Shown: piece after piece, positions 11,213 to 63,263 of the stretch | How positions within the stretch are numbered: the first letter of the stretch is position 1 | Layout of the letters: the number at the start of each line of letters is the position of its first letter | Assembly: GCA_037447605.1 (NCBI GenBank) | Contig: CM074805.1 | Location: forward strand, 4,931,361-4,995,360 | DNA: 64,000 nt | Reading direction: 5' to 3' | Origin: Zygnema circumcarinatum SAG 698-1b | Lineage: Eukaryota; Plantae; Zygnematophyceae | Notes under the pieces: generated by a model | What the model saw: only the letters and a program-made list of their open reading frames with translations | Databases searched by the model: none | What the model was told of the DNA's origin: nothing | Position numbers and translations under genes: made by a program

Positions 11213-11246
<34 letters not shown>

Positions 11247-11372
11247 CCTCTCTCCTTCACACTCTCTCTTCCCATTTCCGTTTCTGCTGTCACCCTCCTC
11301 AGTCGCACTATTTTTCCTTTACAAGGACGTTTCTCCCTGCTTCCTTCCTCTAGCCCCCCCTCTCTCTCACTC

Positions 11373-11433
<61 letters not shown>

Positions 11434-12613: not shown

Positions 12614-13441
12614 GTTGCTCAAATTAAGGGTCGGAAGTTATGGCAAGGGGGACCTTCTCTCTCTCGCGCGCTCTCTCTCTTTCTCTGTCTCTCTCCCCCC
12701 TCTCTCTCTCTCTCCCACCTTCCCTTCCATCTAAAAAAGGAAAAAAGGGGCCTCGGTTGCGGGGAGGGGGGGGGGAGGGGGGTAGCAAATCATTAAAATT
12801 AAATCGCTCGTTCACATTCTCAGCCTTCATGGTTCGTCGAAGGAGACTCTCGTTCCTTTTTCGGCCTTCACATAATTAGTTGAAAATAAGAGTTTGGGTA
12901 TTGAAATAGGACATAACACTGTTCGTGCCACAGCATTTGTTTGCCATTCGATTATGCTAAACTCGGGATGCATTCCCTCCTTTGAAGTTGTCAGGCAGCG
13001 ACTGTACAGTGTAGTCTTTACCTTCACACCTAGTGAGGACTTAGAATTAAAAGTAAGCTGGGTCCTCAGAATTGATAAATGTGCTCCGTTTATCTCAACT
13101 GGAAGCCGCGCTTAGAGCTCTTAGAATTGCCTGTAGGGCTGTAGAATTTGGAATGTTTAAGCAGAAAATACTTATGGCATTCCTTTGTACTCGTGTACAG
13201 CGAAGGCATGGTGGCGAGAATGCTGCTTTATGATTGAGAGGATTGGAAGGAGAATGGTGGAGATGTAAAGAATTTGTTGACTGGGTTGTGGGCTTCTGTA
13301 AGTTTTAGTACCTGTCTAAATATTTTTTTGGTCTTAATGCTCATTGACCTGCAAATGGCGCTCCCTCCTCCCCTCCCCTCCCTTTCTCCCTTCCAAATCT
13401 GTACGAACAGAGGGAGGCTCCTCCTCACTACCGTACAACTC

Positions 13442-13453
13442 TGCCACGTGGCA
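13442..13453. promoter_or_regulatory. Perfect G-box/ABRE palindrome upstream of OSCA-b
   Basis: TGCCACGTGGCA. Confidence 0.5.
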
Positions 13454-14434
13454 CTCATGGTCGGTGCCCAATCGCGATGCGCCCCCATCGGGGCGTGCGT
13501 TGCGACGTGATGTGACATGACGTGATACGTACGGTCTGGTTCGAACCATAACAGAGAAATGGTACAGTTGCGTGCCACACATGGAAACGGTATCATACAG
13601 TAATTGTACGAAATGACGGAACGCCCGACAGTGCTCATGGACATCCCTCGCGCCTTCGTCGTAGGACGAAGGGGTTTGAACGACCCTTGTGTGCTAGAAA
13701 GGATGTGCTGCTGCTTGTGGTGCTCGGGCCAATGAGTAGAGCATGCATTGGCGTTGATCTCAAGATGGCAATTCTATTGAAGGCCCAACAACGATGGATT
13801 TGGCATAACAACTCACTGCTCGTAGCTTTTCAAACGTTCCTATGACATTTGTGTGTTCCTAGTTCATTTCCCCTCGTGGTGCCATCGTGAGATCAATGCC
13901 AATTCTTCCCTCTGACTTTTTCTAACAATACGGTACTGCGACTGACGATTGTGAAGTCTGTCTGTCTGTTCTCCGAATCCCGCTTCGACCTTTTGGGATT
14001 GCTTCCTCCCTCTTTCCTCCCTCTCCACCATTGCGTCTCTCGCGTCGACTAATCGACCTTTTCTCGTTCTCTCTTACCCCCCCCTCTCCTCCACTCCGAC
14101 CCCCCTTCCCTCCATCACGCCCCCATCCCCCTTTTCTCTCCCTCCCTCTCTCATCCGTTCCATTCTCCCTCTGCCGCTCCCCCTGTGCTGACTCAGTTGC
14201 TCCTCCCTGGCCCTCCTTTTTCTACCCTCCCAAGCTCCCTCTCCCGCTGTCCCTCCTCGCTGCCCCGACTCTTATCCTTTTACCAGCAACCTTTCCCCCG
14301 CTCCCTCCCACCGTCCTCCACTCCCCTCCTCGCATTTTACCCTCCCCTTCCGCCCTCCCCCACCTCGTCTCCTCTCCTCTTACTGCCTCCCTCCCCCTCT
14401 CCGGCCTCTCGCTTATGTCCCCCTCCTCCCCACC

Positions 14435-32804: not shown

Positions 32805-34970
32805 TCATGTCCTCCTTCCAAACCTCCTCTCCCTTCGCTGAAATGAAGCCATGGCTGCCATATATTCCGCCTCCCCAAAGTCCGGCCAGCACACGGGGCT
32901 GAAGTAGAGCTCTGAATACGCAGTCTGCCAGAGCAGGAAATTGCTGAGCCTCTGTTCTCCGCTCGTCCGAATGAGAAGGTCGGGTTGGGAGAGCTCTCCC
33001 ATCCAGCTCGTTCCCAACTCCTTCTCTATGGCTGCTTCGGTGATATCAGAAGGTTGCATGGTTCCCATCTTTACCTTCTCTGCTAGCTGCTGGCAGGCTC
33101 TCGTCACGTCTCGTCTGCCACTATAACTCACCGCAATATTCAGCATAAGTCCTGAATTTCCAGCACTTACTTTGTGAGCTTCGGAAATCAGGGTTTGCAG
33201 TGAGTCGGGTAGCATATCGATGTCTCCTATAAACCGGACACAAATGTTTTCCCTGCACCCAGCAAAAACGCACGCTTTTTGCAACTACAATATGGAATAA
33301 CACCACCACCACCTTGCACAATACAATGATAGATTTATGACACAACAGAAGGAAGCAGATAGTGAAAGCTCCATTCAAAAACGCATCGCGGTAAGGGAAA
33401 GTAGGTAGATTGTGACAAGTGCCTTTTTCACCTATGCAAAGATGACAACTCTTGTTGAACTGCTCGCTCAAATAGACCCATCAAGAAAGAGACCTCCGTC
33501 TGCGATTCCACCCATCCGTATTCATCGATCAGTACTATCGATATTCTGTCTGGAAACCTTGAGACTGACGGGAAGTCACGTTTATCGTTGGATAGTCAGA
33601 CGTGGAAGGCAACGCAGCGAGAGAAAGCCCACAAATTACATTAGCCATACTTCAACCCATTCCACTTTATGTTCAGCTAATTACATTGCATGTCCTAGTC
33701 ATCATTTGTGATCAAGACCGACAAAAGGTTGCAAGAACTTCCATGCAATGGACGTTTCCTTCAAAAACCAGATTTTAGGAAAAAGTCAAAATAGCATTCG
33801 AAACAGCTGACAGCCGACAACGACAATCGAGCTCCGAAAGACCTCGAGCTTCGAAAAAAAAGAAGGGACAAGCACCTGCGAACGAAGCCAGTTTTCTGTC
33901 GAGAATGCAAAGACAGTGAGGGCCTTCAGACCCCATGTTGCCGAAAGCCGCACAATCTTCTGCAGGACTTGCAGTCCTACTTCGTGTCCTGCATTTCCTG
34001 GCAGTCCTTTTCTTTTCGCCCACCTCGAGTTTCCGTCCATAATTATTGCCACGTGGCGCGGCATGTTTCGTGGATTCAGATCCAAAAAATGCTCTTCTCG
34101 CAACATTTGCCCATCGCCTGATTCTGTCGAAACTCTTTCGAGCAGATTCGCAGCGGGAACATGTTTATCTTCCGTTGAGTCGCATAAAGGGGGATGTAAA
34201 GGCGATGAGCTACGAGACGCGTGAATGTGCAAGGAGGGGCTTGGGTTTACGGGGGACCGGAAAGGGCCATCGTCAGGGTGTGAGGAATTCGGGTTCGAAA
34301 AGCCAATGTTTGAGTAAGCAGAGTTTGGAAAACTGGGGTAAGTAAAACTAGGATTACAACTTGCAGGATTTGAAACTGCGGGAATCGACGCGGTAGAGTT
34401 GGAAACGTCAAGGGTAGAGTTAAGAAAATTAGGGTTAGACATGTTAGGGCTCAAAAGCTGCGGGTCTGAGTGGTTAGGGTGACTAAAAGCTGGCTTTGAG
34501 AAGCCCAAGCCTTCTGCATAGTGCCACGTGTCGCCCGCAGGGGTGTCCACGTGGACATGACTCCCAACCCCATTAGAGAAGCTCGCCACTCCGCTCTCCA
34601 AACTGTCACAAACGGCGCCGCAATTCGCCCCTCGTTCGTCTCCTCTATACGGGGCTCTGCTCTCCACTTTCTCCTCCGACAGGGACGCCGCTGTGGCAGA
34701 TGCGATGCCCCCCTTCGCCTGCCTCCGCCCATGGATCGAGCTTCTTCCTTCAGCAGCAGCAGGTGCGGAGAAGAGAGACGGAGTAACGGCGTGCTCTGCG
34801 ATGGCACTATCAAGCTCATATCCCTTCAGCCGCAGTAGGTGAGACGCGTTAGCTCCATAGCCTCCTCCTCCTCCTGCTCCTTTCCCTGAAATAGTACGAC
34901 CTTCCTTCCTCCGCGTGTGGTGGCCGTGGCGCGACTGCAGAGGCAGGCACTGCAGGGCCGCGGCCGCCAT
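32805..34970 (-). CDS. CPT: cis-prenyltransferase (polyprenyl/dehydrodolichyl-PP synthase), probable plastid clade; exons 33876-34970, 33432-33499, 32805-33252
   Basis: MPRHVAIIMDGNSRWAK, TVFAFSTENW, TEVSFLMGLF, IAVSYSGR, PDLLIRTSGEQRLSNFLLWQTAYSELYF and RERRFG. Confidence 0.93.
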
Positions 34971-35104
34971 GGCTGGGCCTGCAGGAGGAGGTGGAGTGAG
35001 GGGATGGCTCCGCCAACCATTGAGAGGGAGCGAAGGGATTCAAAGGGACACGTGGCGCCACCACCAGCCACTGTATTGTACGGACGAAACACGTACTTTT
35101 ACTA

Positions 35105-36065
35105 GGAAAATTCTATTCTCACACCTTTTTTGTCTACACAGAGACCTTTTTTCGCCGGGCAGGTTCTATTTTGGAAAAGAAGGATTAAAAACAAAAAAAT
35201 GCTTTTTTACACCTTTCTGGAATCGATACAAACCTTTTTCCGCGGGCAGATTTTACCCCTGATTTTCTTTTTTGGAGAGAAAAAAATATCGGCTTGCCCG
35301 AATCCGCTAGGAGCGAAAGATCCGTCCGCCAAGAGATCGTTCGTGCGTGTGTGTCCTTCACGCGTGCAGTGAATCTCCGCCGTCGACTAACTCGCAGATC
35401 GCACCACGGCAGATCACCGTTCGATCTGCAGTTCGGGCTCGGTCCCAGCGAATGGCACGAGCCCACGTGTCCCGCCAAATCTGTCTCAAAGTGGATTCTT
35501 ACAAAATCTGTACGGTCACAGTTTCGAGGAAAGGCGAAATACCGTACATTGACTGTCTGGACCAATAAAAATTAGCTATGTCATAAATATAACACGTGGC
35601 AGGTGGTGATTGGTTTCCAGTCTTGGCGGTCCAGCTCGTAATTGTGCGGAGATCTCGGGCCGAGGGACGCGCGCTATAGCACGTGTCAAAAGGCTTTGGC
35701 GGGACACGTGGGCACGTATTCGCTGGGACCGAGCCCGACTGCAGATCGAGCGGTGATCTGCCGTGGTGCGATCTGCAAGCTAGTCGACGGCGGAGATTCA
35801 CCGCACGTGTAAAGGACGCACACCCGCGAACGATCGCATGGCGGAAGGAGCTTCCGCTCCGAGCGGATTCGGGCAAGCCGATATTTTTTCTTTCCAAAAA
35901 AAAAATCAGGGTTATAATCTGCCCGAAGGAAAAAGGTTTGTATTGGTTCCAGAAAGGTGTGAAAAAAGCATTTTTCGAATTTAAACCTTTTTTTTTCTAA
36001 AACTGAAGCTGCCGTCGAAAAAAGGTCTGTGTGTAGACAAAAAAGGTGTGAGAATAGAATTTCCC
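35105..36065. mobile_element. Mutator-like foldback MITE A (~370-bp diverged TIRs, 9-bp TSD)
   Basis: Arms ~35105-35482 and ~35695-36065 (GGAAAATTCTATTCTCAC / GTGAGAATAGAATTTCCC); CTTTTACTA at 35096-35104 and 36066-36074. Confidence 0.85.
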
Positions 36066-46718: not shown

Positions 46719-47734
46719 CTGCCGGCTTGGAAATTGCGGGCAGTTATCGTGGCTTTCTATCTGTTCTAGATTTCGAAGTGACTGGGTGTAGCATCTCTAT
46801 CGCTCTCTGGTTTAAGAAATCGCCAGTTGAAGATTCCTTTTTCAGATCAGTGCAGCGTGACGTGATTGGACATATTCATAGTTTGTTTAGCGATTTGCCT
46901 TTCTGTTCAATTCTGAACCAATCTATACTATGAAATTTTCTTTCAAGTTTCTGGTGATGATTGATTGGTGTGTTTTGGTGGAGAGTTTGACTGCCTTTTA
47001 TCTAGGAACGTGATGCTACTCTTACCGATAGGAATTGGTCAGGATAAATGAGTAATCTCCCTGGGATACAAATGATACATGCCACAGGTGTGAAACAATT
47101 TACAAATATTTACGTTCATTGAGATTGTAGTAGACGAGATCTTTTGGCATTTTTCCCGTATAGGGTGGATTAGGCATAGGACATGAAGTTTGTATAGTAA
47201 TGAGTATACACACACGGCGTTTGATTTGGGAGAAATGGAAAAAAACGAACAAAGACAATGTGTTCTGCATAGGGTGATAGCGTCGTTTCGTACTACGTCA
47301 GGGAGTGGAAGAGAGTCAAGCACAAAACATGCAGTATAAAAACCTCACAATTACACCCAAGCTGAATTTTCCAGAAATGCGAAAGGTAGTATGGGGATCC
47401 GGAATTCATTTTCTAAAAGGACGCGATGAAAGTCTCAAGTGCAACAATATGACAAAGTGGACCCGCGTCTATATTAACTCCTGCATTTACCTCTCCCTTG
47501 TGGGAGAGCGTTTCCGCTTAACAACTTCCACACTCTAATAAACACGCTTTTCTATGTCTAACGCCGATTCGTACCGTCGGAAAGGACCCAAGCGATGTGC
47601 ATTCCTCTCCTGAAAAGGAAGAAGGGTAAAATATACAAAGAGGCTTGCTTTATTTCACAAGAATAATGAAGGACAGCAGGTGAGCCCGTTGAGGTTCCTC
47701 CCGCTCCTCTTCTTTTCTCCCTCACTTTCTCCAC

Positions 47735-48455
47735 TTAAGCGAGGAAACCAAGTTTTTCCCCGTTTTTCTTCGCGAGGCGGATGAGTCCTTGCCTCTGCTT
47801 CGCGTCAGCCCCAACCGATTTGCAGAACTCCGTGATCACCTGAATTCCACCACATCGAAAGACCATCGTTCAATTTCACTATTTTGTAAAAGACAGCAGA
47901 AGACACAGAGAGGGAGACTGAGGGAGAGAGAGAGAAAGGCGGAAAGAAAACGAGGAAGAGACTTACAAACCCTCTGTTCAAGCACCCACCCGCAATCAGC
48001 CTCATTGCAGTCTACCCGCGTGCCAGAAGAACAATCGCAGCCCTCGATCTCACCAGCAGAAACGGCCAAAAAACAAACTCTCAAACGGCCAAAAAACAAA
48101 CTCTCAAACGCCCAAAATGAACCCTCTCAAGGAGCCCCGCCCCGCCCCTAACAGGCTGTACCTGCGAGTGCAGCGCAATGCCCTTTCCGCGGAGTTGGTT
48201 GAACTGCTTCGCTCCGATCGCCTTCCGCACCACCACAACGATAGGCGCGAAGACCCCCTTGCCCTCGTGCGGGTTCGCCATCCTCACTTGGCTCCTGGAA
48301 GAGACCGCTCCGCTTGCGGGCCGTGCAACCGATGAGTTCAACTCTCTCCTCCCGAAGCCTCTGAACCCTGACTGCTGGGAAGCCACTCCTTCCCTCTCCC
48401 CCTTCAACCCGCAGGTCGCCGGAACAGCCACCGAGCTCATCACTACCGCTGCCAT
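47735..48455 (-). CDS. PGR5: PROTON GRADIENT REGULATION 5; exons 48162-48455, 47735-47839
   Basis: Transit peptide, then EGKGVFAPIVVV..NQLRGKGIALHSQ|VITEFCKSVGADAKQRQGLIRLAKKNGEKLGFLA*. Confidence 0.97.
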
Positions 48456-48663
48456 GCCTCTCTTCCTCTGTGCCTCTCTTCCTCTCTCCCTACCCTCACT
48501 CCTTCCCCTTTCCTTTTGTCCACCTCCTACCTCTTCAGACCTTTTACCCAAATTCTGTGCTTCAGAAACTGATGCTGAGCTTGACGCAGTCTTTCTCTCT
48601 CACGAAATAGCGAGTGAATTACTAAGTCAGGCGGCGAGGTAGCGATGTAGGAGTGCCCGAGCT

Positions 48664-48672
48664 GTATATAAG
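48664..48672 (-). promoter_or_regulatory. Candidate TATA element for PGR5
   Basis: TATATA core ~210 bp upstream of the PGR5 ATG, before a CT-rich 5' leader. Confidence 0.4.
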
Positions 48673-49375
48673 GCTGAGAGCCGGTGGAGCGACCCGCCTG
48701 GGCGGGCGGGCAGCGGCCCCCCTCTCCGTGGACCACGAGAAGGTGCAGCCGCCGGCCGCCCGGGAGAGGGCGGGCGGGTCTGAGGCCCACGCACGAGCCA
48801 CGTCGGGCCGCCGCGGCCGTCCGATGGCGCCCACGGACGGTCCCGATGCGTCCGCGCCGCTCCGAAGCCCGTTTCTCCCGTTTCGTGCACGACACGTGTC
48901 CCGGACGGCGGGCGCGCGAGCCAATGGCTGCGGGGGAGGGGAAGGACGAATGCGTACTTTGCAAGTGCGTATCAGCCACGTGGTGGAATGTGAGGCGTGC
49001 TGGGATCCAAATCTACGCGCTGATTGGCTGATGGAGTGGTCGCCTCCGCGGCGGCGATGGACGGCCGTGCGCTTCCAGAAGGGCGCCTGTCGCCGTACAG
49101 TGAGCCGTACGAATCGGATTTTTTGTCCCCTTGTTTGGAATTTTGGTTGTACGAATTGGCACGGCGTTGAATGCACACGGACAAAAGTGTAAGGACAACC
49201 GTACACAGATGGCTTCGTCGAAGCTTCGTATCCAATATTGTATCGGAATATATGTAAAATATCGGATACGATATTTATGGCTTTCGCGGCAGGCGGAGGT
49301 CGATACCAGTCGGCGTGACAGGTGTCACGCGATGCTGTCTCGCCTTTCTCGTCGCTCATTCCAGCCACATTCATG

Positions 49376-49428
<53 letters not shown>

Positions 49429-49751
49429 TTTAGGTCACTTCTCTCTCTCCCTCTATCTTCCCTCGTCTCTATTCTGCACGATGGGGCTTAAATCTTAGCA
49501 TTCTCGCTACATAAATGAAATAAAGATCGTTACTGTCAGGTAGGGGGTGCTGTGAAAACAAACGTACGAGTTCCGATTGCCTTTCCTACAGATTTTTTGT
49601 AAGATTGAGCCCTCCTATTTGTGCTCGTTTTCAGGTTTCCTGTCTCAAACCCTTGTTGTCACTGCTTCGCCCTCCTCTCTCCCCTCTCTTTCCCCCGCTC
49701 ATGAGGCGTACCGTAGGCTAGCGGGTATCTCCTTTCCTCCATCCACCCGCC

Positions 49752-52438
49752 ATGCCGGCCGCCCTCCTCCCTTCCGCCCGCCTCAGCCATGGCTCCTCTT
49801 CCGCGAGGAGACTACTCTCTCGAGAGGAATCGCTTGAGGATGTCGCCTGCTCCAGCAACTGCTTCAGAGCAGCTCCCTCAGCTTCTGGGGAGGAACCAAG
49901 TTCGTCAACTTCTTCATTCTTTCTCGCGGGAAAGAGCTCTGCGGGATCAGCAGCATTTGACAGCTTCATTTATTCAAGCAGGAAAGGGGAGCTCAGATTT
50001 CAAGCATCGAACGCTTGTAGGAAGATTAGGGCTAGCAGACGGTACAGTAGCAGTGGCAATTTCGGTGATTCTTTTCAATGTAGCGTCCACGCTCACGCAA
50101 GAGAGGTAGAGTTAGGGTTGTGCAACAGCGGGAGGGACTGGGGATTATTTAGTAGAAGTAGAGTATGCAGCGGGTGTAGAGCAGCAGCAAGATTTGAAGG
50201 AGGACGGAGAGGAGGATTGAGCGCGCTGTCATATGATGATGGAGCTGACTCTGCAATGTTGAATATGGAAGATGGGATCATGGAGGGGCCTTCTTGCATA
50301 TATGTGGGTCCCGTTGAAGACGCCGACGTGAGCCGGTTGGAGGCGCTTTATCAGCAGGTATTGATGCATGCATGTTCGCATGAACACATATATGTGTGGG
50401 TATCGTGTACGTGTACTATAACCTGCACACATGGATGCTTGCATGTATCCGTACGTGTTTATGTATGCATTACATGTATGTTGGCAGCACTTTTTCCGGT
50501 TTCGGTTTTGGCAGCCCGCATGCAAATACCTGTTCCAGTAGACTTAAGAGTTCTTTCAGGAATACCATTATCTTTTGATCTTATGTCCCGAATACTGAAG
50601 CTTGATGACCTTACTCGGCATGCTGTAAGGTTAAGAGTGAAGACGTCGGGAAAGACATAGGGTAGGGGAGGAGAGAAGTTTGAGGGAATGAGAGAGGGAG
50701 AGAGAGTACGAGGAGGAGAGAGAGCGAGAGGAGCGAATCCTTCATTTCGATATTGTTCTGATTTGCCCTTCGAATGCTGCACAGGCTCGAGACGAGTACT
50801 ACAGTGGCCATCCTCTCATTTTGGACGAGATGTTTGACAAAGTCGAGGTGAGTTGGTGAAGAAAAGCATGAATGAAGGAAATTTCTCGCATGTTTTACGG
50901 AATTATGATTTCATAATTCTATCATGCTTTGCAAGGGTATGGGTTAGCCCTTCAAGAGTCGCAAAGGTAGGGACTGAAAGCATATTTACAAAGATTGTAA
51001 TGCGAAGGGTTCCATCAGCAAACCTTATGCGTAGGTGACGGAGAGATGTTTCTTTGAAATTTGGCAGCTAAAGCAGAATGTGGAATGCGGGATGGTCTTT
51101 GGTCTGTTTTCTGCAGAAAAAGTTGCGCCAGTTTAGGTCAAAATTGGTTCGAAAATATCCGCGCTGCAGTTTGAGGCGATATACTGCATATGCTGATGCG
51201 GAGGTTTGATTTCTCAACACTTCAAACTGTTTCGAAAAGTAGACTGATTGCTGGCAGAAGCACGTCCGCGTAAATCTTCACTTTTCCCACTCGCTTGTTG
51301 CAGGGACTTGTATCGTGAGCCTTAAACTGTATAGAGAACGCTTCCCATCCCCTGCGTTGCATTTCTTCATTGCCTGAGCTTGGGTATTTTTCAATAGAAT
51401 ACCATGTGGATGCTCTGATCAAAAGTCATAGATTTTTCATGGCATTTCAACACTTGCACTGCATTCACTTCATACTGAAAGTAGGTAAAAGTGATTTTTT
51501 CTTTTCAAGTTCTGAAGTCAAGTGTGGTGGAATTGAGGTGCAGTTCGACCAGTCGCAGATGATTGCCCTCGCCGGAGTATGGTCTCTCCTTCTGGCAGGA
51601 GGAGTCGGCCTCATTGCGGTGGCTCCAATATGCCTCGCCCTGCAGGCGTACCGCCACTCTTTGGCCATTCACAGTGGAGAATTGGGTTCTGCAATCCTGT
51701 ACTTGAGCTCTCCGATGGCGCTAAACGGAGGGCTGTTGGGAGCACTGGGCTTCGTGCTTGGCGCAGCCGTCGCTACAGCTGCAGGTAGGATGGAGTTTTG
51801 CTTCTATGTCTATGTAGATCTACTTGCTGCCACTATCTCCACAGCCTCTCCTTACTCGTCTTCTTCTTTTTACTCACCTGCTCTCCGTGTCCTTCCTCGT
51901 TTCGAGCGTCTATCATCAATAAGGGAAGGGTGTGAGTAACAGATGGGAAGAGGGGGGGCTGCGGTGTGTGCTTCACAGTGCGATCTTTGAAGGAGGTGCT
52001 GAAGGGTAGCCTGGTGGCCCTTAAGGGCACTTGCCCTGCGTGTGGGGAGGAGGTGTACGCTTTCATCAGAGCAGAAGGGTCGGTACGCCCGAGACAAAAG
52101 TCCGAATGCCACGTGTGCGAACAGCCACTAGTGTTTCACGCAACACTGGAGGTACGAATCCTCTCACTGCTGCTTTGCACTCCTTAGTGAATGGTCCTTA
52201 CTCGGGGGTTCTCCTTAGCGGCGAGGAGACGAGCGAAAGCAGAAGGAACCGGGACGCTTATATTGCAATGGGATCGGGTTGTGCCAGCAATGTGTGTCCT
52301 TCAGCGGATTAAAGAAGCGTTTGGAATGTGTTTTTACGATGTCATGTGCAGGAGTCTAAGGGGCACATATGGGCCTTCGGGAGGATATATCTCGTGATTC
52401 GCACAGCGGATCTCTCTCCTCGGCCGGATGTGCACTGA
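49752..52438 (+). CDS. PGRL2: PGRL2-like (At5g59400-type) member of the PGRL1 family, ~6 exons
   Basis: MEGPSCIYVGP..LEALYQQ|ARDEYYSGHPLILDEMFDKVE|..KYPRCSL..ADAE|TM pair|ALKGTCPACGEEVYAF..CHVC..|WAFGRIYLV; closer to PGRL2 than to PGRL1 (which has a CPNCGTEN-type motif). Confidence 0.85.
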
Positions 52439-52959
52439 TTAGGAGTCGGATGGTGAATAACGATTGGACCCAAGCAGGTGTTGCACTCGTATGGTGGAAC
52501 GTTGTGTTTTCGACGAGGCCTATTGCAAAGGCTTTGAAACTTTCGCCTGATGTAGTTTGAGTAAGTGCGTTGTCCTATGAGACGGGCAAAGAGCGAATGA
52601 GCAGCTCTAGTTGCCCAATTCTTAGTTAGGGTTTCATTGCTCGTTTTTTCTCATTTCTGTTACCCAAGTCGGGCAACACATGAGGTCGCCACAGCTGCTG
52701 CACTTCCCCTGAAGTGTGGCCCTGTGAGCTTGTTTATTGTTCAGCTTTACTTAATAGTCACTGCAGAAAACACTCTTTTGCGTATTGTTACTGGTTCGCC
52801 CATAATGGAAGGCTCGACAGGCATGCTGTAATCAAGCGGGTATGCTCGCTGCTCTATGAACTCTACTTGTTGGAGTGACACCACGGCTTTAGAAACTAGT
52901 GCAAGATTGGTTTTTTTTACCAATCAATGAGAACACTTCTGCATTTGGCAATCACAACA

Positions 52960-53355
52960 TGCGGTTACTTAATTGAAAGACCCAATTGAGCGAGCAGCTT
53001 GCTGAAAGGAACCTCCAAGAGCAACACATCCGACCAAAAGTGAAAATTGTTTCGGTGTCTTGATTTCCATTAAGTATGCCTCGCGGTGATTTCCTTATTC
53101 CTGCTGCTCCTGGTCGTTGAAGGCAATTTGGGTGAACAAGCTTAGAGCATGCTGCACACTAACGACTTCCAAGTCATCTGAATGAAGGAGCATCTCCCCA
53201 ATAATTAGGTCGACTACCGATTTGTCGATGGTGAAATGCAGCAATGCAGTACCTTCGAAATGAGCATTCAAATTATTGGCAAAAGGTGGGTCGACATCCT
53301 TGAAAAACGAGTCACGTTCTAATAGTGACTTAAACTCTTTGTACTCAGTCCCCTA
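52960..53355 (-). pseudogene. Degenerate DNA-transposase fragment (hAT-like family recalled from oomycetes, bryophytes and red algae)
   Basis: Hand translation: EYKEFKSLLERDSFFKDVDPPFANNLNAHFEG..LHFTIDKSVVDLIIGEMLLHSDD....HALSLF..*..YLMEIKTPKQFSLLVGCVALGGSFQQAARSI, with in-frame stops. It is absent from the ORF track. Confidence 0.55.
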
Positions 53356-53634
53356 GAGTTTTTCAAAACCAATTAGGGGGCAGTCCCCTATATTAGGCCG
53401 AAATCCCTTATTTGAGGAGGCCTGCGTAAGGTATGTCTGATGTAGTCATGTGGGGAAGTGCGAGCCATCATGCCGTACGGTACGGCACACCATATCGACA
53501 ATATCGTACTGTCGTCACGATATCAGTTATCGCGAGGAAGCCGCCGATACGCGCGGCGGCGGAGCCCTGCGCCTCCCTCCCTCCCGCCTTCCCCCTGCCT
53601 GCCACGTGGCAGAGCGAGAGCGCAGCAGGGCGCC

Positions 53635-56245
53635 ATGGAGGGCGGGGAGGCGCGGGTCCTGAGCGTGGCGTCGCAGCCGTTCGACGTGGCCTTCCATCCG
53701 GCGGCGGAGTCGGTCGCAGCGGGCCTCATCAGCGGCTCCATCGAGCTGTCAGTTCGTCGTGCCTGCAAACCCTAAAAACGAGCTAGGGTCTGTGACGAGG
53801 GGCTGCACGCATGCATACCTGCTGACATGAAAACAGGAGTAATTCCCATGCATAGCAGTCGATGCGCGCATGAATTGTCGTGGATAATGATTTTTTTAGT
53901 ATTGTTCATATGTGTATGCCAAGCATTCATACGCGTGACATGAAGGCATCGTCACAGAGGTTTTTCCTCGCTTATATGTTTTGAAAATGGTGTTTGATGA
54001 GCAGGTTTTCATATGGAGAAGGCGACCCGAAAAGGTGGTCGTGCTATCCGGCTTGGCTGGCATGTAGGGATTGCATGCGGGTATGGGTGTGGGCCTATGG
54101 CTGCGGTTATGGTACTCTTATGTACATATATATACATATGTTTAGACTTATGGACATGAACCATGGGCTTGTAGGTCACCATTGGATAATTCACGGGTCA
54201 GTCGTTCTTAAATTGGGTAGTATCCACAACTCTCACATGGGCCAAATGACATTTTTTTGTATTTTTCTTGATGTTAAGTATATTGAAGAGGAATGGGTAT
54301 CTTCATGGAATGAAACCTGTATTTGGACTCAAAATGAGGACGTCTCTCGTTTTCACAGACTATGGAAAGCAAAGCGGGCACATAAAGAGTCGTGCCGAGC
54401 AGTCCGCTTCCTCAATAATGGCCAATGTGCGTATTACTCTAATTCCGAATCTGTCTATCAATTTCTTTTCTGTCATATCCTCCGTTTTATCTGATGTCTT
54501 GCAGCTTGTACGCTGAGAGTCAGTATATGAGAGGTTTGAGGGAGGGAGGAGATGTCGACGGTGAATGGGATATGTGAGGATAACTGAGGGAGGCCCTCAA
54601 TTGCGGATTTCGGCTGGGTTTAATTTAGTCCCATTGACTACGATAGCTGTATCTTACATGCCGACTATTTGCGCCTCTCTGTGGAGGAAAAGCTAACAAT
54701 CACAAGTGTCCATGCACGTCGTGCGTGGAATCTGTGCTTGTCGCTGTGTTTAAAAAGGAGGACGTCCCACGTCACGGGCATGCGTCAGCTAACTTACTTA
54801 GTTTCCTTGAACCAGGATACTGCTGTGGTTAGCCAACATGGCGCCACGTCAGCCTAAACTAATGCAAGGGCGGTGCAGACCTAGCCGAAAATAGGGTGAG
54901 GGAACTAAATGAAGGGTACACCCTGAGAGTCCTGAGAAAGGATCAAAGCAGATATGGAAAACCTTGGATTCAATCTTTTCTCTGAATTCAATTTTTCATA
55001 GACTATGGGAATGGGGTTCATGAAGGGCGCAGATTTATTGAGCGCTTCTGCGGATCACTCAATATTGGCCACTGATGTAGCGAGTGGCAAAATGGTCTCA
55101 CGACTATTGGAAGCACATAGGTGAGAAAATACAGAAGTATTGCTTAAGTATTTTCGAATTCGTTGGTTTCTAGGAAAACCAGCCGGCTAGTTTTTAATCC
55201 TAGTCCATGCGCTCGTGTTTAGTTGTGTTAGGCATCCATTCACTATTCGCCTCGTCCCTTGCATGCAACATTATGATGCAATTTGCTAGATCTGGGAACT
55301 CTAAGTACAACAAGGGACTACCCATGTATCAGAGTAGGATGTGCTTTAGGAAAGTTAGTAACTTAGATTAAGTGTGCTAAAAGAACAGAGGGAAGGGTTA
55401 TTGGAGTTGGCATAAGGCAGTGCGGCTATCAACCGGATGGAAGTTCTGTCAGAGAACACGATGGCGACTGGAGATGATGACGGAACGGTGAAGGTGAACA
55501 TGCATCACTTGTTGAAGAAAAATCTCATTGAAACCATTTCCAGATTCAAGCTGACTCATACACCTCTGTTGAACTTAGCCACAGTCTAGTATAGTAAAGT
55601 AAAGCAAAGCAAATCAATCTAGTATAGTAAAGTATGGAGAAAGGCGCTTTGGTTTGAAGGTCTGGGATATTCGACAAGAGGAGTGTTGCAGCACATTTTC
55701 CGCTCATGAGGACTTTGTTTCCGACATGGAACACTCTGCAGCTTCCATGCAGCTTCTTTCTGTCAGGTGAGTGTAGTTTGGGAGAGAGATTTTCAAACCC
55801 TTACCAACCCTGAGGGTACTGAACCTCATGTTCTTGCATTTTCAAACTTATATCCTGTTCCGGCTGTTGAATATTGAAGAACTGTGAGGTTTCTTCCTTG
55901 GCTTTCCATGCTGCAGCGGTGATGGGACCCTCTGCATATACAACCTCCGTCGGAACAGGGTCAGTTTGCATTCTTTCTTTCTTGTCTCAATCTTGGTAAA
56001 ACCAGAGTCAGAATACACTTTAAGTTATTTCCGAAGAGGAGAGATGACATGAGTGGGTTTGGACGTGGAGTGTTGGGAAGGTTTCCTATGGCTGGAATTT
56101 CAACCTTTTGAACCTCAAAAGTGGGGAAGAGCGGTGAGGGGAGCAGGTGGAAGTTCGGTCGGAAAATGCGGAGGACGAGCTGCTGTCAGTTACCATCATG
56201 AAGGTGCGCTTGGGGGGGGGGGGGGGGGGAAGAAAAGAAAGAGAA

Positions 56246-56303
<58 letters not shown>

Positions 56304-59300
56304 AGAGGGAGAGGAGGGAGGGGAGGGAGCGGGGCAAGGGGGTGAGGGAGATAAGAGGGGAGGGAAGGGGAGGGGTAGCGGAGTGAGGACGAGGAGGGGA
56401 AGATGGAATAAAAACGGGAGGAGAATGAGGAGTGAGGAGAATGAGGATTGAGAAGAGGGAAAGATCAGATCGGAAGAGAACGATGGTGGAGAGAGGAAAG
56501 TGGGACAAGAGAGCGGGAGAGCGAGAGGAAGGAAGAGAGAAAGGGGATTGGAGATAATGGTGATGCTATTTCTTAACTGAGTTTAAGTGATTTGGGTTGG
56601 CATGGAGCAGCACAGACAGAAAGTGGTATGTGGGACGCAGGAAGGGACTCTTCTGCTCTACTCTTGGGGCCATTTTGCAGACTGCAGGTGCAATATTTTT
56701 TCCTTTTTCATAACTTACGTTCAAACGGTTTTGCATAAAAGTTTGAATAATTTATGAAATGGGCCAAACCAAGGTTTTAACTGTTGTTGGTGCTTCAAAC
56801 TGAGGCGCGTGTTCCATGTGGCGTTTTATGCTGCAGCGACCGTTTTCCAGGTCATCCCAACTCTGTAGATGCTCTTCTTAAGGTGAGCCAAAAAGATAAA
56901 GAGAACTTACTTATTCCATTTTATCAGGCCTCCGCTACTCGTGTGTTCTCCCTCCTCACTTATCACCCTTTGCCTTCCTTTCTCCTCCTCCCTTCTCGTC
57001 TCCCACAGCCCGCGGTCTTGTCTGTCCCTTGGATTCCCTCCCCTTCCTCTCCACTCCCACTCCCTTCTAGTAAATTTAGTTTTTCCTTGCCTCTCTCCCC
57101 CCAACCTTCCATCCCCTCTTCCCTCGCCATTCTCTTTCCTCCCCTCACTCTTCTCTCACTCTCTCCTTCCTTCTCTTGTCTCCTTTCTCACTCCTTGTCC
57201 TCCGTACCTTGTCTCTATGTCCCCTTCTTCTCTCATTCACTGCATCGTGAATGTGTCAACAACTGAAGGGAGATGTTCCCTCTCTTCCGTATACGCTTAA
57301 ACATCTCTCCTCCCGATTCTCCAGAATGAACTGCCACATGGAACCTGTGGGATGCAGGTGGATGATGACACTCTCCTTACCGGATCTAGTGATGGGCTAA
57401 TCAGGTATCTCCCAAACTCTAAAATGCGGAAATCCTTCACAGATCGGACCATTAGACAAACCAGTCGACTGGTTGGCAACCAGTGGTTGCGGACCGAAAC
57501 AACCATTCGACTGGTTGCCAACCAGTGGCTCAAGACCGAAACAACCATTCGACTGGTTTGGAACCAGTGGATGCCACTGGTTGGCAACCATTCGACTGGT
57601 TTGGAACCAATGGATGCCACTGGTTGGCAACCATTCGACTGGTTTGGAACCAGTGGATGCCACTGGTTGGCAACCAGTCGACTGGTTGCGAACCAGTGGC
57701 GCAGGACTGAAACAACCATTCGACTGGTTCGGAACCAGTGATCCAATGGTTGGCAACCATTGAATTTCTGAAATTATGCCTTTTTGCAAAAATGGGCCGT
57801 ATGTGTTTTTTGGTGGGTTGCCAACCGTTGACAACTAGTGTAACAAGCCTGATGCGTACAGATGCGTACGGATTAGTACAGTCGAGTCGTATGATTGTAC
57901 GAAGATTATGTACGGCCGAACCGTAATAGTTTTCTCTAAAACGCCGACAGCATTTTGGTAACTGTAGCGTTCAGTTCACTACAACTAGTGATTTAATGGT
58001 TGCCAACCATTTGATTTAATGGATATAACCATTCGACTGGTTGCCAACCAGTGCCGCCAGATCGAAACAACCAGTCGACTGGTTGCCAACCCGTAGACGT
58101 CCAACCATTGCCATCCAATGGTTGTCCAATGGTTGCCGATCCACTGGTCCGAACTGTGAAATCCTTGCACCTTAAAAAGATGAAGGAGAAGAAAAGGCCT
58201 TTCCAAGGGGTGGGAGGAGGGGAAATGGAAATTCATGAACGTCTGAAGACCGGGAGCCTTCAGTCTTTCGGCACATTCAAGTTAACTGGGCAAGGGCAAG
58301 TTAGTTAATGCTTTTATTACTGAATTTAAACCTTTTTGTTGCTCAAAATTACTTGATGCATCGGCTTTGCAGAGTGGTGTCAATCCTTCCAAACAAAATG
58401 TTGGGAGTTGTCGGAGAACATATGGATTATCCGATTGAGCGCTTGGGTAATTCTTCTCCCTACCCCTTGAACTCTTGTCTCCACCTTCTTTCGGGTTGTA
58501 AAGTTTTTTCTTTCAACTCTCTCCTTCCCTTTCGTCGTCCGCTGCAACTACTCTTTTCTCTTTTTTGTCCCTTGTACTTGCTCTCTTTGTCCCTCTCTCT
58601 CTCTCTACTGTGTCCCTCCTTCCATGGTTTTCTTTTGATCTCCCATACTGTGCCCACCTCGCATCCACCCTCTCCTATCCTAATCGACCTTCCTATCCCA
58701 CTCTCTATCTTTTCCCCCTCGCTTTCTTGATTTGCTCTTTAAACTTTCTCACCCCACTTTTTCCGTCTCCCTCCACTTTGTTCTCCCCCTCTCTTTTTCC
58801 TCCTTCACTTCCCGTCCCAGCCTGTTGGTGATTGCTCTGCAATTTTTCCTCATGCTTTCCATGCATTGCTTTAGTAATGGTGATTTATACCTCAGAAAAA
58901 GAATTTTTGGTCCGCTACATATTGCTTTGCCGGATGATGGTGCAGCTCTCTCACATGATAAGAGATTTCTCGCCAGTGCTTCGCATGATAAGACGCTGAA
59001 GGTGAGAAAGTATCTTGAAGGATGTATTTGAAAAGGTGCAAAGTGTGCAATGTTTTTCATCGAAAAGAATGTTCAAGTGGACTTTAAGTCCTTCTGAAGA
59101 GCTCAGTATGGCCATTATCTGTCTGAAATTGGATGAACAGATTGTTAATGATGAAGAGCCACATTCTGGCTAAAATGGTCATTGGGTGTAAGGGGGCTTG
59201 GAGGGCAGCTTTGGGATGTGGCCTACCTCTTTGAAGAGGGCGGAGAAGGAGATGGCGAAGGCGACGGAGATCGACAGGGAGAGGGGGAGAAAGGGAGCGA

Positions 59301-61555: not shown

Positions 61556-63263
61556 CTAAAAGAGGCGCTCCAACACGTAGTCCACCATCCCCTCCAGGCA
61601 CCTCTTCATCTCCCCCTCCGCCAGATACTGCAGGCACTGCCGGGCAAGCCGCCCCTCCTCCTTTGCCAGCTCCCTCGCTTCGTCCACCCCCCCCCCTCGC
61701 AGCACCAACTCAACGGCTCTTTGCAGGGACCCCTCGTCTACAAACTCCGAGTCAATAAGATCCTTCAATTCCACTCCCTCGGGCCCTCTTAAAGCAAATA
61801 GCGCCGGAGCCGTTAAATTTCCACTAGCCAAATCGCTTCCCGCAGGCTTTCCGAGCTGTTCGCTTGTTTGCGTGAAGTCGAGAATATCATCCACAATTTG
61901 AAACGCGAGGCCCAAATGTCGGCCGTATTCATACATAGCATCTGCTACTGAGGGGTTGACATCACTAAATATGGCAGCGCACTTAGTGCTAGCTGCCAAC
62001 AAAGAAGCAGTTTTGAAGAAGCTTTTATCGAGATACTCTTCCATAGTGAGGGAGGAGTCAAAGAGACTCGCTGCTTGTTTAATTTCTCCATTTGCAAAAT
62101 CCGCAATCACCTGCAGCTCGATAGGGGCGCTAAGCACGATAAGTAATAGTTCCCTGTAATTGGCCCTTAAGAATCTTATAGATTTATATCAGATCCAAAA
62201 TGCGGACTGGCAGAGTCGATGGGTTTGAAAAAACAAAAAACTGTGTGCTATCTCGTACTTGGGGTTCCGACAAGACCGTGATCAGTCGAAATGGTAAAAC
62301 ATCTAAACCCCATATTCGTCAAGTTCATTTAGGTCTACAAGAAGGTCCAGTGAGAAACGTTTGTTTTCTGAATAGGGTATCGGACGGCATGACTAACTCA
62401 AGAAAATCACTGCAATTTGGAACATGATTGCCTCCTAGCATGATTTAAAAATCCCCTAATATACACGTCAATGAATAATCGCAACCACTAAAACAAAAGC
62501 TGTCGAATTGACTTACTTTCACTGATCAAAGATCCCGCATTGTTCGATTTGCGGCTATATCATACCTGACTAATCAGCTTGATGACCTCCAAATTGTCGA
62601 GATTGGCAAGGTACCACGAGGACTGTGCAAACATAAAGTCCCCTGCCAGGACAGCGACTCGGGTGCCGTACAACTGATGCACTGTCTTCTTCCCTGCAAA
62701 CCCCCCCAGCTTCTAAAACATATTAGTTCTATCGCACTCTCACACTCTCTCCCGACATTTCCTGTTCTTTCCAGTCTCCTCTATCTGCCCTCCTCTCTTC
62801 TCACACCACTCTTCAACCTCACTCCGCTGCAACCAATCGTTTAGGGCCCACCTCAACATCACGATACCGACAACATACCTCTGCGCACATCACTGTCGTC
62901 GAGAACATCATCGTGGATGAGGCTGGCGGTGTGGATCATCTCTGTGATCTCTGCAAGCCTCCGATGCTGCGGCCGTATCCCTCTGCACATGCCCCGTTTG
63001 GGCTTGTCTATCAGCAGCGCGATAAGCAAAAGGGAGACGGGCAACGAAGGACAAAAAAAAATGGAATTATGGAGAGAAAGCGACGAGAGAAAGGACTGGC
63101 AGTGACAGATAAGAGCGTGGGGAAATAACAGCAGGTGGGAGAAAGAAATCAGAGGAGAGAGAGCGGAGAAGGGAGTGTAGCACGTGTAGCGAAACGAAGG
63201 GAGGGAGGGAGTGCGCGAGAAAGTTGGCGAGAGGACGAGGGGAGAGCACGTGCGCGCTCGCAG

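What the first reader, a model, noticed from the sequence alone, without database searches (positions are those of the whole stretch)
47735..52438. PGR5 and its putative negative regulator PGRL2 form a head-to-head gene pair
Seen: PGR5 (-) and a PGRL2-like gene (+) diverge, with ATGs only ~1.3 kb apart (48455 and 49752). The spacer holds G-boxes (48891-48900, 48975-48983) and several GTAC cores, and both genes have CT-rich leaders. Known: in Arabidopsis PGR5/PGRL1 drive antimycin-A-sensitive cyclic electron flow, PGRL2 promotes PGR5 degradation when PGRL1 is absent, and the genes are unlinked. Inference: this may be a bidirectional promoter coupling an effector to its turnover factor (toxin-antidote-like dosage control), or an ancestral linkage. 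I am not aware of it having been described.
Basis: partly seen in the sequence, partly recalled or inferred. Interest (0 to 1): 0.85.

Follow-up and report, generated by a model that had tools for sequence, protein, structure and literature searches.

The report
Ancient PGR5–PGRL2 divergent gene pair
In this streptophyte alga, the gene for the photosynthesis regulator PGR5 lies back-to-back with the gene for PGRL2 (which removes surplus PGR5 in Arabidopsis); the same pairing occurs in distant green algae but not in the land plants sampled, so it looks like an old, probably co-regulated module.

Summary
A 2-exon PGR5 gene (-, 47735-48455) and a 6-exon PGRL2 gene (+, 49752-52438) diverge from a 1,296-bp spacer. 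RNA contigs from three public runs confirm all six introns.

The + gene belongs to the published PGRL2 family. It is 50% identical to a cluster that contains PpPGRL2 (PNR40655). It has two membrane helices, six conserved cysteines and the GRIYL tail.

RNA ends lie at most about 450-780 bp apart, which is bidirectional-promoter range.

The same divergent pair occurs in Klebsormidium nitens, Closterium sp. and Spirogloea muscicola. It also occurs in three ~70% GC metagenomic green-algal contigs, where the start codons are only 92-204 bp apart. Flanking genes are not shared between these loci.

The pair is split in Marchantia, Calypogeia, Riccia, Sphagnum, Selaginella and Arabidopsis, and is absent in marine prasinophyte-like contigs.

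I found no paper describing this linkage.

Best reading: an ancient head-to-head module, probably sharing promoter elements, that couples PGR5 to its turnover factor. PGR5 has a uATG-free leader and PGRL2 has three uORFs, which may set unequal protein output.

Untested: co-regulation, a PGRL1-rooted tree, and the identity of the high-GC contigs.

The parts
47735..47839 (-). PGR5 exon 2 (last 34 codons plus stop; VITEFCKSVGADAKQRQGLIRLAKKNGEKLGFLA)
   Evidence: Matches NF049860 profile positions 32-65 at 50.9 bits. The spliced joint is seen in runs X1-X3.
47840..48161 (-). PGR5 intron (322 nt, GT-AG on the minus strand); holds a 23-bp tandem repeat at 48060-48117
   Evidence: Joint 'skips 322, CT..AC' in three runs. 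Tandem repeat. The intron falls after '...ALHSQ', as in L012, L059 and L061.
48162..48455 (-). PGR5 exon 1 (98 codons: presequence plus start of the mature protein)
   Evidence: NF049860 positions 2-31 at 43.2 bits. Homologues named PGR5.
48456..48982 (-). PGR5 5' leader as far as RNA contigs reach (to 48941 in X1 and 48982 in X3; one contig in X2 stops at 48650 next to a TATATAA at 48665-48671). GA-rich in mRNA sense and free of uATGs.
   Evidence: contig pieces, adaptor at 48650; TATATAA; no ATG on this strand from 48456 to 49356.
48456..49751 (.). Shared spacer between the two start codons (1,296 bp) with a GC-rich core (up to 77% GC at 48700-48900)
48893..48898 (.). G-box CACGTG number 1
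   Evidence: ACGT-core elements occur in all six spacers compared (27 found against 14 expected).
48977..48982 (.). G-box CACGTG number 2, at the 5' edge of the longest PGR5 RNA contig
48983..49433 (.). Stretch between the outermost RNA ends of the two genes, at most about 450 bp. There is no contig depth at 49066-49413. It ends in (CT)25 at 49379-49427.
   Evidence: (depth table, contig pieces).
49434..49751 (+). PGRL2 5' leader (RNA contigs begin at 49434-49440, just after the CT repeat that the read tool masks). It carries three short uORFs starting at 49481, 49515 and 49701.
49752..50357 (+). PGRL2 exon 1: about 175 aa of non-conserved Ser/Arg-rich N-terminus, then PSCIYVGP...LEALYQQ
   Evidence: joint at 50357/50785.
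50785..50847 (+). PGRL2 exon 2 (ARDEYYSGHPLILDEMFDKVE)
51117..51203 (+). PGRL2 exon 3 (contains KYPRCSL)
51544..51784 (+). PGRL2 exon 4: two hydrophobic segments (about residues 257-288 and 310-334)
   Evidence: Kyte-Doolittle.
51979..52151 (+). PGRL2 exon 5: zinc-ribbon-like CPACGEE...CHVCE
   Evidence: PF14255, 26.8 bits; most of the 76 hits in 1.84 billion proteins carry the same motif.
52352..52438 (+). PGRL2 exon 6 (WAFGRIYLV tail plus stop)

Best explanation
This is an evolutionarily old divergent (head-to-head) gene pair.

PGR5 is the small thylakoid protein at the centre of antimycin-A-sensitive cyclic electron flow. It shares a short intergenic region with PGRL2, the two-helix, cysteine-rich thylakoid protein that in Arabidopsis binds PGR5 and triggers its degradation when PGR5 is not held by PGRL1.

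Shown here: both genes are intact, spliced and transcribed, and their outermost RNA ends lie at most about 450-780 bp apart. The same divergent pair exists in Klebsormidium, Closterium and Spirogloea and in three very GC-rich green-algal contigs, while flanking genes differ. The pair is split in the land plants sampled.

Inferred: the spacer acts as one bidirectional promoter region, with ACGT/G-box type elements between the two starts. Transcription of the effector and of its quality-control factor would then rise and fall together. Unequal protein output would be set after transcription: PGR5 has a long leader without any upstream ATG, and PGRL2 has a leader with three short uORFs. Selection for this coupling, or the difficulty of separating two genes that use the same elements, would have kept the pair together since before the streptophyte algal lineages split, and probably since before the chlorophyte-streptophyte split.
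For: Gene models and expression: (all six introns seen as joints in three runs from two studies).

PGR5 identity: named homologues, 55-67% identity; NF049860 positions 2-31 and 32-65; 43.2 + 50.9 bits.

PGRL2 identity:
- 50-56% identity over residues ~172-414 to about 290-430-aa plant and algal proteins.
- P0241 = PNR40655 is 'PpPGRL2' in Supplementary Table 1 of PMC8225790. It shares a 90% cluster with P0070, which hits the window protein at E 4e-76.
- collinear alignment, six conserved Cys, two hydrophobic segments.
- the paper's definition of the family.

RNA ends. PGR5 contigs reach 48941/48982, or 48650 in X2. PGRL2 contigs start at 49434-49440. There is no depth at 49066-49413.

Synteny:
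- Closterium L001.
- Klebsormidium L008: PGR5 7617-8614 (-) and PGRL2 10001-13613 (+).
- Spirogloea, from annotated coordinates on scaffold s214.
- L012, L059 and L061, with ATG-ATG spacers of 92, 204 and 168 bp.
- tblastx finds only these two genes shared between the window, L001, L008 and L012.

Split in land plants: no PGRL2 within 10 kb of PGR5 in Marchantia paleacea, Calypogeia, Sphagnum and Selaginella. Sphagnum locus tags lie on chromosomes 1 and 3. The Riccia tags are about 800 genes apart. Arabidopsis has the genes on chromosomes 2 and 5.

Functional tie: in Arabidopsis PGRL2 interacts with PGR5 in split-ubiquitin assays and destabilises it, also in Synechocystis (PMC8225790).

Leaders.

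ACGT-core elements occur in all six spacers, 27 found against 14 expected.

Locus-specific contig depths of PGR5 leader against PGRL2 are 7333/361, 1532/79 and 1625/69, a ratio of 19-23 in all three runs. The tool warns that contig depth is a poor measure of expression.
Against: No transcription-start mapping exists. Contigs cannot show true 5' ends, and the CT repeat is masked by the read tool.

A 1.3-kb spacer has room for two independent promoters.

Co-expression rests on three runs from two studies and on contig depths.

In Arabidopsis PGRL2 is a very low-abundance protein, and its co-expression with PGR5 is not reported in the paper read.

The pair is not kept in about 24 marine prasinophyte-like contigs with at least 1.5 kb upstream, nor in L009-L011, L013 and L014. 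Coupling is therefore dispensable in many lineages.

The taxonomic identity of the high-GC contigs is only inferred, so the depth of the linkage beyond streptophytes is uncertain.

G-box enrichment in this window alone is not significant.
Confidence: 0.72

Rival explanations
1. Passive retention. The two genes are neighbours by descent only. Each has its own promoter inside the spacer, and the adjacency survives simply because no rearrangement has happened to hit it.
For: The spacer in the window, Klebsormidium and Closterium is 1.3-1.6 kb, enough for two promoters. The pair has been lost without obvious harm in land plants and in many marine green algae.
Against: None of the flanking genes is shared between the window, Closterium, Klebsormidium and L012, while the pair and its orientation are. 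In three contigs the start codons are only 92-204 bp apart, which leaves no room for two separate promoters. The two products are known to interact functionally in Arabidopsis.
Confidence: 0.2
2. The + gene is not a PGRL2 orthologue but PGRL1 or another paralogue, so the effector/turnover-factor reading does not apply.
For: No PGRL1 sequence could be obtained, so no PGRL1-rooted tree was built. Database names of the hits are automatic ('PGR5-like protein 1A/1B').
Against: The hit family contains PNR40655, the PpPGRL2 of the paper that defined PGRL2. The paper puts PGRL1-PGRL2 identity at only 19%, whereas the window protein is 45-56% identical to this family. An exhaustive search with exon 5 returned almost only proteins with the same CP.CGEEV...CHVC...GRIYL signature. 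Angiosperm members are about 290-305 aa, like AtPGRL2 (299 aa), not 324 aa like PGRL1A.
Confidence: 0.03
3. Convergent origin. The head-to-head arrangement arose separately in streptophyte algae and in the high-GC algae, rather than being ancestral to both.
For: The identity of L012, L059 and L061 is unknown. Most chlorophyte-like contigs lack the pair. One marine contig (L020) has PGR5 5.9 kb away in convergent orientation.
Against: Two specified genes becoming immediate divergent neighbours twice by chance is very unlikely in genomes of about 10^4 genes. The PGR5 intron position (after ...HSQ) is the same in both groups.
Confidence: 0.05

Closest known systems
Arabidopsis PGR5 / PGRL1 / PGRL2 module (Ruhle et al. 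2021, PMC8225790)
   Same: The protein families are the same. PGR5 shows the conserved mature domain. PGRL2 shows two membrane helices, six conserved cysteines including two CxxC pairs, and the GR(I/V)YL tail. In Arabidopsis PGRL2 interacts with PGR5 and lowers its level.
   Different: In Arabidopsis the genes lie on different chromosomes, and no transcriptional coupling is described. Here, and in six other green-algal loci, they are immediate divergent neighbours. The function of the algal proteins is untested.
Conserved bidirectional gene pairs with one shared promoter region (for example histone H2A-H2B pairs, yeast GAL1-GAL10; from general knowledge)
   Same: The orientation is divergent. 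RNA ends lie less than 1 kb apart and start codons are as little as 92 bp apart in relatives. The products act in one pathway. The adjacency outlives the surrounding gene order.
   Different: The partners here are antagonists (an effector and the factor that removes it), not subunits or sequential enzymes. Their outputs are very unequal.
Toxin-antitoxin style dosage coupling
   Same: In Arabidopsis, PGR5 that is held by neither PGRL1 nor PGRL2 disturbs electron flow and growth, and PGRL2 removes PGR5 that PGRL1 does not hold (PMC8225790). Co-transcription would tie the safeguard to the hazard.
   Different: This is not a selfish or addiction module and not an operon. There is no evidence of differential stability of the two products. 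It is an analogy only.

Membership tests
PGR5 (PROTON GRADIENT REGULATION 5) | Match to the curated PGR5 profile over its full length | tested here: met
   NCBIfam NF049860 (65 positions, cut-off 50 bits): exon 1 matches positions 2-31 at 43.2 bits and exon 2 matches positions 32-65 at 50.9 bits. The Closterium orthologue scores 101.8 bits in one piece.
PGR5 (PROTON GRADIENT REGULATION 5) | Closest relatives are proteins annotated as PGR5, of about 120-140 aa with an N-terminal presequence | tested here: met
   49 hits, many named PROTON GRADIENT REGULATION 5, with lengths mostly 120-140 aa. The window protein is 132 aa.
PGR5 (PROTON GRADIENT REGULATION 5) | Role in cyclic electron flow / proton gradient formation | not testable with these tools
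   Needs a knock-out and P700/ECS/NPQ measurements in the alga.
PGRL2 (At5g59400 family) | Strong similarity to a member named PGRL2 in the defining paper | tested here: met
   P0241 = PNR40655 = PpPGRL2 (Supplementary Table 1). Its cluster representative P0070 aligns to window residues 172-413 at 49.6% identity, E 4e-76. Collinear alignment.
PGRL2 (At5g59400 family) | Two transmembrane domains | tested here: met
   Two hydrophobic segments at about residues 257-288 and 310-334 (Kyte-Doolittle 19-residue window above 1.6). The paper states two TM domains.
PGRL2 (At5g59400 family) | Conserved cysteines (five of the six PGRL1 cysteines plus a PGRL2-specific one) | tested here: met
   C182, C240, C351, C354, C376 and C379 are conserved across PGRL2 members from angiosperm to alga. 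One-to-one mapping onto the paper's letters was not possible because its figure is not held.
PGRL2 (At5g59400 family) | Separates from PGRL1 in a phylogeny | not tested
   No PGRL1 sequence could be fetched. The three homologue searches and the single exhaustive search returned almost only PGRL2-type proteins. Indirect evidence: 45-56% identity to this family against 19% between PGRL1 and PGRL2 in the paper. The tree of PGRL2 members places the window protein in the streptophyte part.
PGRL2 (At5g59400 family) | Binds PGR5 and lowers its abundance | tested here: inconclusive
   Complex prediction for the Spirogloea pair (P0053 with P0010:82-155) gave weak support: score 0.34, best of 3 controls 0.00. 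That mark was reached by 51 of 78 solved complexes and 2 of 108 mismatched pairs, but passes at 0.60 or under are more often wrong than right. Runs agree in at least 90% of contacts and partner pLDDT is at least 55. The biochemical function is not testable here.
Bidirectional promoter gene pair | Divergent orientation with transcript starts less than 1 kb apart | tested here: met
   PGR5 RNA contigs reach 48650 (X2), 48941 (X1) and 48982 (X3). PGRL2 contigs begin at 49434-49440. The gap is therefore at most about 450-780 bp. Contigs give outer limits, not mapped starts.
Bidirectional promoter gene pair | Correlated expression of the two genes | tested here: inconclusive
   Both genes are present in the same three RNA runs, with a depth ratio of 19-23. 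That is only three runs from two studies, and contig depth is a poor measure.
Bidirectional promoter gene pair | Shared cis-elements needed by both genes | not testable with these tools
   ACGT-core elements occur in all six spacers (27 against 14 expected), but their function needs reporter assays.
Conserved microsynteny under constraint | Same pair and orientation in distant lineages while neighbours differ | tested here: met
   The pair is found in the window, Closterium, Klebsormidium, Spirogloea, L012, L059 and L061. Only the two genes are shared in tblastx between the window, L001, L008 and L012.

The most novel reading that the evidence does not exclude
The PGR5-PGRL2 divergent pair is an obligatorily co-transcribed module that dates back to early green algae. 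On this reading PGRL2, not PGRL1, is PGR5's primordial partner, acting as a built-in safety factor produced whenever PGR5 is. Its break-up on the way to land plants would mark a rewiring of cyclic-electron-flow control, with PGRL1 taking over and PGRL2 reduced to a trace-level back-up.
Probability: 0.25. Interest if true: 0.8.

Novelty: new member of a known kind. Interest (0 to 1): 0.66.

Why it matters
PGRL2 was named only in 2021, and its role is known from Arabidopsis alone, where it is barely detectable. A head-to-head linkage with PGR5 that has survived in several deeply separated green-algal lineages, while all other neighbours changed, is independent comparative evidence. It indicates that the PGR5-PGRL2 relationship is old and functionally important.

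It gives photosynthesis researchers a concrete handle. One short spacer (92 bp to 1.3 kb) can be dissected in transformable algae to ask how a cell balances a potentially harmful regulator against the factor that removes it.

It also raises a dated evolutionary question: why was the coupling given up in land plants?

Finally, it flags annotation gaps. PGRL2 is not called in the Closterium assembly and is truncated in Spirogloea and in metagenome gene calls.

Tried and rejected
- PGRL1 outgroup: none could be obtained. The exhaustive search with exon 5 and the searches with P0054 and P0281 returned no recognisable PGRL1, so no PGRL1-rooted tree was made.
- Pfam has no PGR5 or PGRL family. Only a borderline zinc-ribbon hit (PF14255) appeared on exon 5.
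- The PDB holds no relative of PGRL2.
- Rfam finds nothing at 47000-53000.
- G-box and GTAC enrichment in the window's spacer alone is not significant. Only the pooled ACGT-core count over six spacers is.
- The 250-aa minus-strand ORF at 48622-49374 inside the spacer was rejected as a gene. It lies in the GC-rich core and has no RNA over 49066-49413.
- The 132-aa ORF directly upstream of PGRL2 in L013 looked PGR5-sized but is not PGR5.
- L007 (PGR5 on a 4-kb metagenome contig) has only 196 bp upstream and is uninformative.
- Naming the organism of L012: the homologue search gave only unnamed metagenome proteins. The Atlas gave a nearest cluster whose two members with a known phylum are Chlorophyta, which is a weak lead only.
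- The complex prediction gave only weak support: 0.34 against a best control of 0.00, a mark reached by 51 of 78 solved complexes and 2 of 108 mismatched pairs. I do not count it as evidence of binding.
- The loose-end sequences at 48404 and 49687 are not elsewhere in the window, so they are not alternative exons from this window.


Full report
**What is in the sequence**

On the minus strand a two-exon gene (48162-48455 and 47735-47839, GT-AG intron of 322 nt) encodes a 132-aa protein. Its C-terminal two thirds read ...EGKGVFAPIVVVVRKAIGAKQFNQLRGKGIALHSQ|VITEFCKSVGADAKQRQGLIRLAKKNGEKLGFLA.

On the plus strand, 1,296 bp away between start codons, a six-exon gene encodes 418 aa. Its exons are 49752-50357, 50785-50847, 51117-51203, 51544-51784, 51979-52151 and 52352-52438, all GT-AG.

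Contigs of three public runs of the same coded organism (two studies) carry joints at exactly these six introns. The runs are therefore RNA, both genes are expressed and the models are correct.

**Identity of the minus-strand gene**

Exon 1 finds 49 relatives of about 120-140 aa, many named PROTON GRADIENT REGULATION 5. The best are at 55-67% identity, from Closterium, Mesotaenium, Spirogloea and liverworts.

The two exons match positions 2-31 and 32-65 of the curated PGR5 profile NF049860, at 43.2 and 50.9 bits against a cut-off of 50 for the whole protein. This is PGR5.

**Identity of the plus-strand gene**

Pfam has no family for it beyond a borderline zinc-ribbon hit on exon 5.

An exhaustive HMMER search with exon 5 against 1.84 billion representatives gave 76 hits. 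Apart from a few long repetitive proteins, their C-termini share the signature ALKG.CP.CGEEV.AF...CHVC...GR(I/V)YL.

The full 418-aa protein aligns over residues ~172-414 at 45-56% identity with plant and algal proteins of about 290-430 aa.

One of these clusters (P0070) contains P0241 = PNR40655. That accession is listed as 'PpPGRL2' in Supplementary Table 1 of the paper that defined PGRL2 (PMC8225790).

The paper describes PGRL2 as having two transmembrane domains and five of PGRL1's six conserved cysteines plus one of its own, and as only 19% identical to PGRL1. The window protein has two hydrophobic segments. It also has six cysteines (C182, C240, C351, C354, C376, C379) that are conserved from angiosperms to algae.

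In a tree of PGRL2 members it falls among streptophyte sequences, outside the land-plant core, near Closterium, Spirogloea and Klebsormidium.

I could not obtain any PGRL1 sequence, so a PGRL1-rooted tree is missing. The accession link and the identity levels make PGRL1 very unlikely.

Other agents' notes on this genome call it an alga or a streptophyte. This fits the tree, but I did not establish the species.

**The spacer and the RNA ends**

The spacer has a GC-rich core, up to 77% GC at 48700-48900.

- PGR5 RNA contigs run upstream of the start codon to 48941 (X1) and 48982 (X3).
- In X2 the contig stops at 48650 with adaptor sequence, about 20 nt from a TATATAA at 48665-48671.
- PGRL2 contigs begin at 49434-49440, immediately after a (CT)25 tract that the read tool masks.
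- No contig covers 49066-49413.

The outermost RNA ends are thus at most about 450 bp apart with the long PGR5 leader, or about 780 bp with the short one. That is within the usual under-1-kb range for bidirectional promoters, but contigs do not map true starts.

The two CACGTG G-boxes (48893, 48977) lie between the proximal PGR5 end and the PGRL2 end. Their number is not significant against the window's own high CACGTG density.

The 'CT-rich leaders' are both CT-rich on the + strand only. In mRNA sense the PGR5 leader is GA-rich.

**Leaders**

On the PGR5 sense strand there is no ATG for 901 nt upstream of the start codon (48456-49356). None of 20,000 composition-preserving shuffles reached this, and the opposite strand has 14 ATGs there. 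This is not seen upstream of PGR5 in the other genomes fetched.

The RNA-supported PGRL2 leader carries three short uORFs, starting at 49481, 49515 and 49701.

I infer that translation is favoured for PGR5 and damped for PGRL2. This fits the very low PGRL2 abundance reported for Arabidopsis, but it is untested.

**Is the pairing conserved?**

I fetched 10-kb flanks around PGR5 or PGRL2 in other genomes and searched them with the window's proteins.

Head-to-head pairs were found in:
- Closterium sp. Naga37s-1. PGR5 is at 10001-10451 (+). An unannotated PGRL2 lies on the opposite strand at 6746-8393.
- Klebsormidium nitens. PGR5 is at 7617-8614 (-) and PGRL2 at 10001-13613 (+).
- Spirogloea muscicola, from the annotated coordinates. 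PGRL2 is at s214:202118-203409 (-) and PGR5 at s214:204138-204796 (+).
- Three metagenomic contigs of 68-72% GC, with start codons 92 bp (L012), 204 bp (L059) and 168 bp (L061) apart.

The PGRL2 proteins of those three contigs are only about 33-42% identical to the window's, and they sit outside the streptophyte part of the tree. The nearest Atlas cluster is labelled Chlorophyta on two records. Their identity as chlorophytes is an inference.

tblastx between the window, L001, L008 and L012 finds only the PGR5 and PGRL2 exons in common. The conservation is therefore specific to the pair and not part of a larger block.

**Where the pairing is absent**

- No PGRL2 lies within 10 kb of PGR5 in Marchantia paleacea, Calypogeia fissa, Sphagnum magellanicum or Selaginella moellendorffii.
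- Sphagnum locus tags put the two genes on chromosomes 1 and 3.
- In Calypogeia they are on contigs of different length.
- In Riccia sorocarpa they are about 800 locus tags apart on a contig of the same length.
- A Sphagnum-like contig has no PGR5 in 4.6 kb upstream of PGRL2.
- Arabidopsis has them on chromosomes 2 and 5.
- No PGR5 lies near PGRL2 in marine prasinophyte-like contigs L009-L011, or in L013 and L014.
- No PGR5 lies upstream in 24 of the 25 metagenome loci with at least 1.5 kb upstream. Many of these are repeats of the same organisms.
- One marine contig (L020) has PGR5 5.9 kb downstream in convergent orientation.

**Regulatory motifs across spacers**

Every one of the six spacers compared holds at least one ACGT-core element. 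Pooled, 27 were found against 14 expected from each locus's own background (Poisson P about 0.001). This is modest support for bZIP/G-box-type control and is not specific to a shared promoter.

**Expression**

The locus-specific PGR5 leader contig and the PGRL2 contig have depths of 7333/361, 1532/79 and 1625/69 in the three runs, a ratio of 19-23. This agrees with co-variation and with PGR5 far exceeding PGRL2. It is only three runs, and the tool warns against using contig depth this way.

**Protein-level link**

In Arabidopsis PGRL2 interacts with itself, PGRL1 and PGR5 in split-ubiquitin assays. It destabilises PGR5 in plants and in Synechocystis (PMC8225790).

A complex prediction for the Spirogloea pair gave weak support: score 0.34, best of 3 controls 0.00. 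That mark was reached by 51 of 78 solved complexes and 2 of 108 mismatched pairs. The runs agree in at least 90% of contacts and partner pLDDT is at least 55. I treat this as inconclusive.

**Literature**

No paper in the library holds PGRL2 together with 'synten*'. The two papers with PGRL2 plus 'bidirectional' carry each term once and their titles and abstracts concern photosynthetic physiology, and the four with PGR5 plus 'head-to-head' are photosystem I or hydrogen-production papers by title and abstract; I did not open any of the six. Within that library the linkage is undescribed. Subscription-only papers were not searched.

**Verdict**

The pair is an inherited, pair-specifically conserved divergent unit of green algae that the sampled land plants have lost.

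That it works as one bidirectional promoter is likely: it is nearly unavoidable at 92-204 bp, and plausible at 1.3 kb given the RNA ends. It remains unproven.

Noticed in passing
window 48456-49356 (minus strand): There is no ATG on the PGR5 sense strand for 901 nt upstream of its start codon (0 of 20,000 shuffles reach this), while the other strand has 14. RNA contigs reach only 48941-48982. Rare longer leaders or dispersed starts under selection against uATGs are possible.
   Followed up: partly
window 48404 and 49687: RNA contigs in all three runs match the window up to these points, then continue with sequence that is absent from the 64-kb window. One point is inside PGR5 codon ~17 and the other is inside the PGRL2 leader. 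The contigs diverging at 48404 carry most of the PGR5 depth in X1. This suggests a second, diverged copy or allele of both genes, perhaps a duplicated pair.
   Followed up: partly
L001 6746-8393 (Closterium sp. Naga37s-1, CANJKZ010000110.1): A complete PGRL2-like coding region is present, but no gene is called there in the gene table returned for this locus. The Spirogloea model P0053 and the metagenome calls P0281/P0079 are truncated at the N-terminus.
   Followed up: partly
L020 387-1133 and 7056-7370: In a 50% GC marine picoalgal contig, PGR5 lies 5.9 kb downstream of PGRL2 in convergent orientation. This may be a remnant of the old linkage after local rearrangement.
   Followed up: no
window 53433-58730 and 61556-62137: The genes downstream of PGRL2 appear to be two. 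One is a WD40 (WDR55-like) gene that starts in a second GC-rich island at about 53400-53800. The other is a polyprenyl synthetase gene on the minus strand (PF00348, 118.8 bits). Neither is next to the pair in the other algae.
   Followed up: partly
whole window: CACGTG is about four times over-represented across the 64 kb (34 found against 8.25 in shuffles). A dense cluster of nine lies at 34050-35809.
   Followed up: no
window 48060-48117: A 23-bp unit (AAACGGCCAAAAAACAAACTCTC) is repeated 2.5 times inside the PGR5 intron.
   Followed up: no
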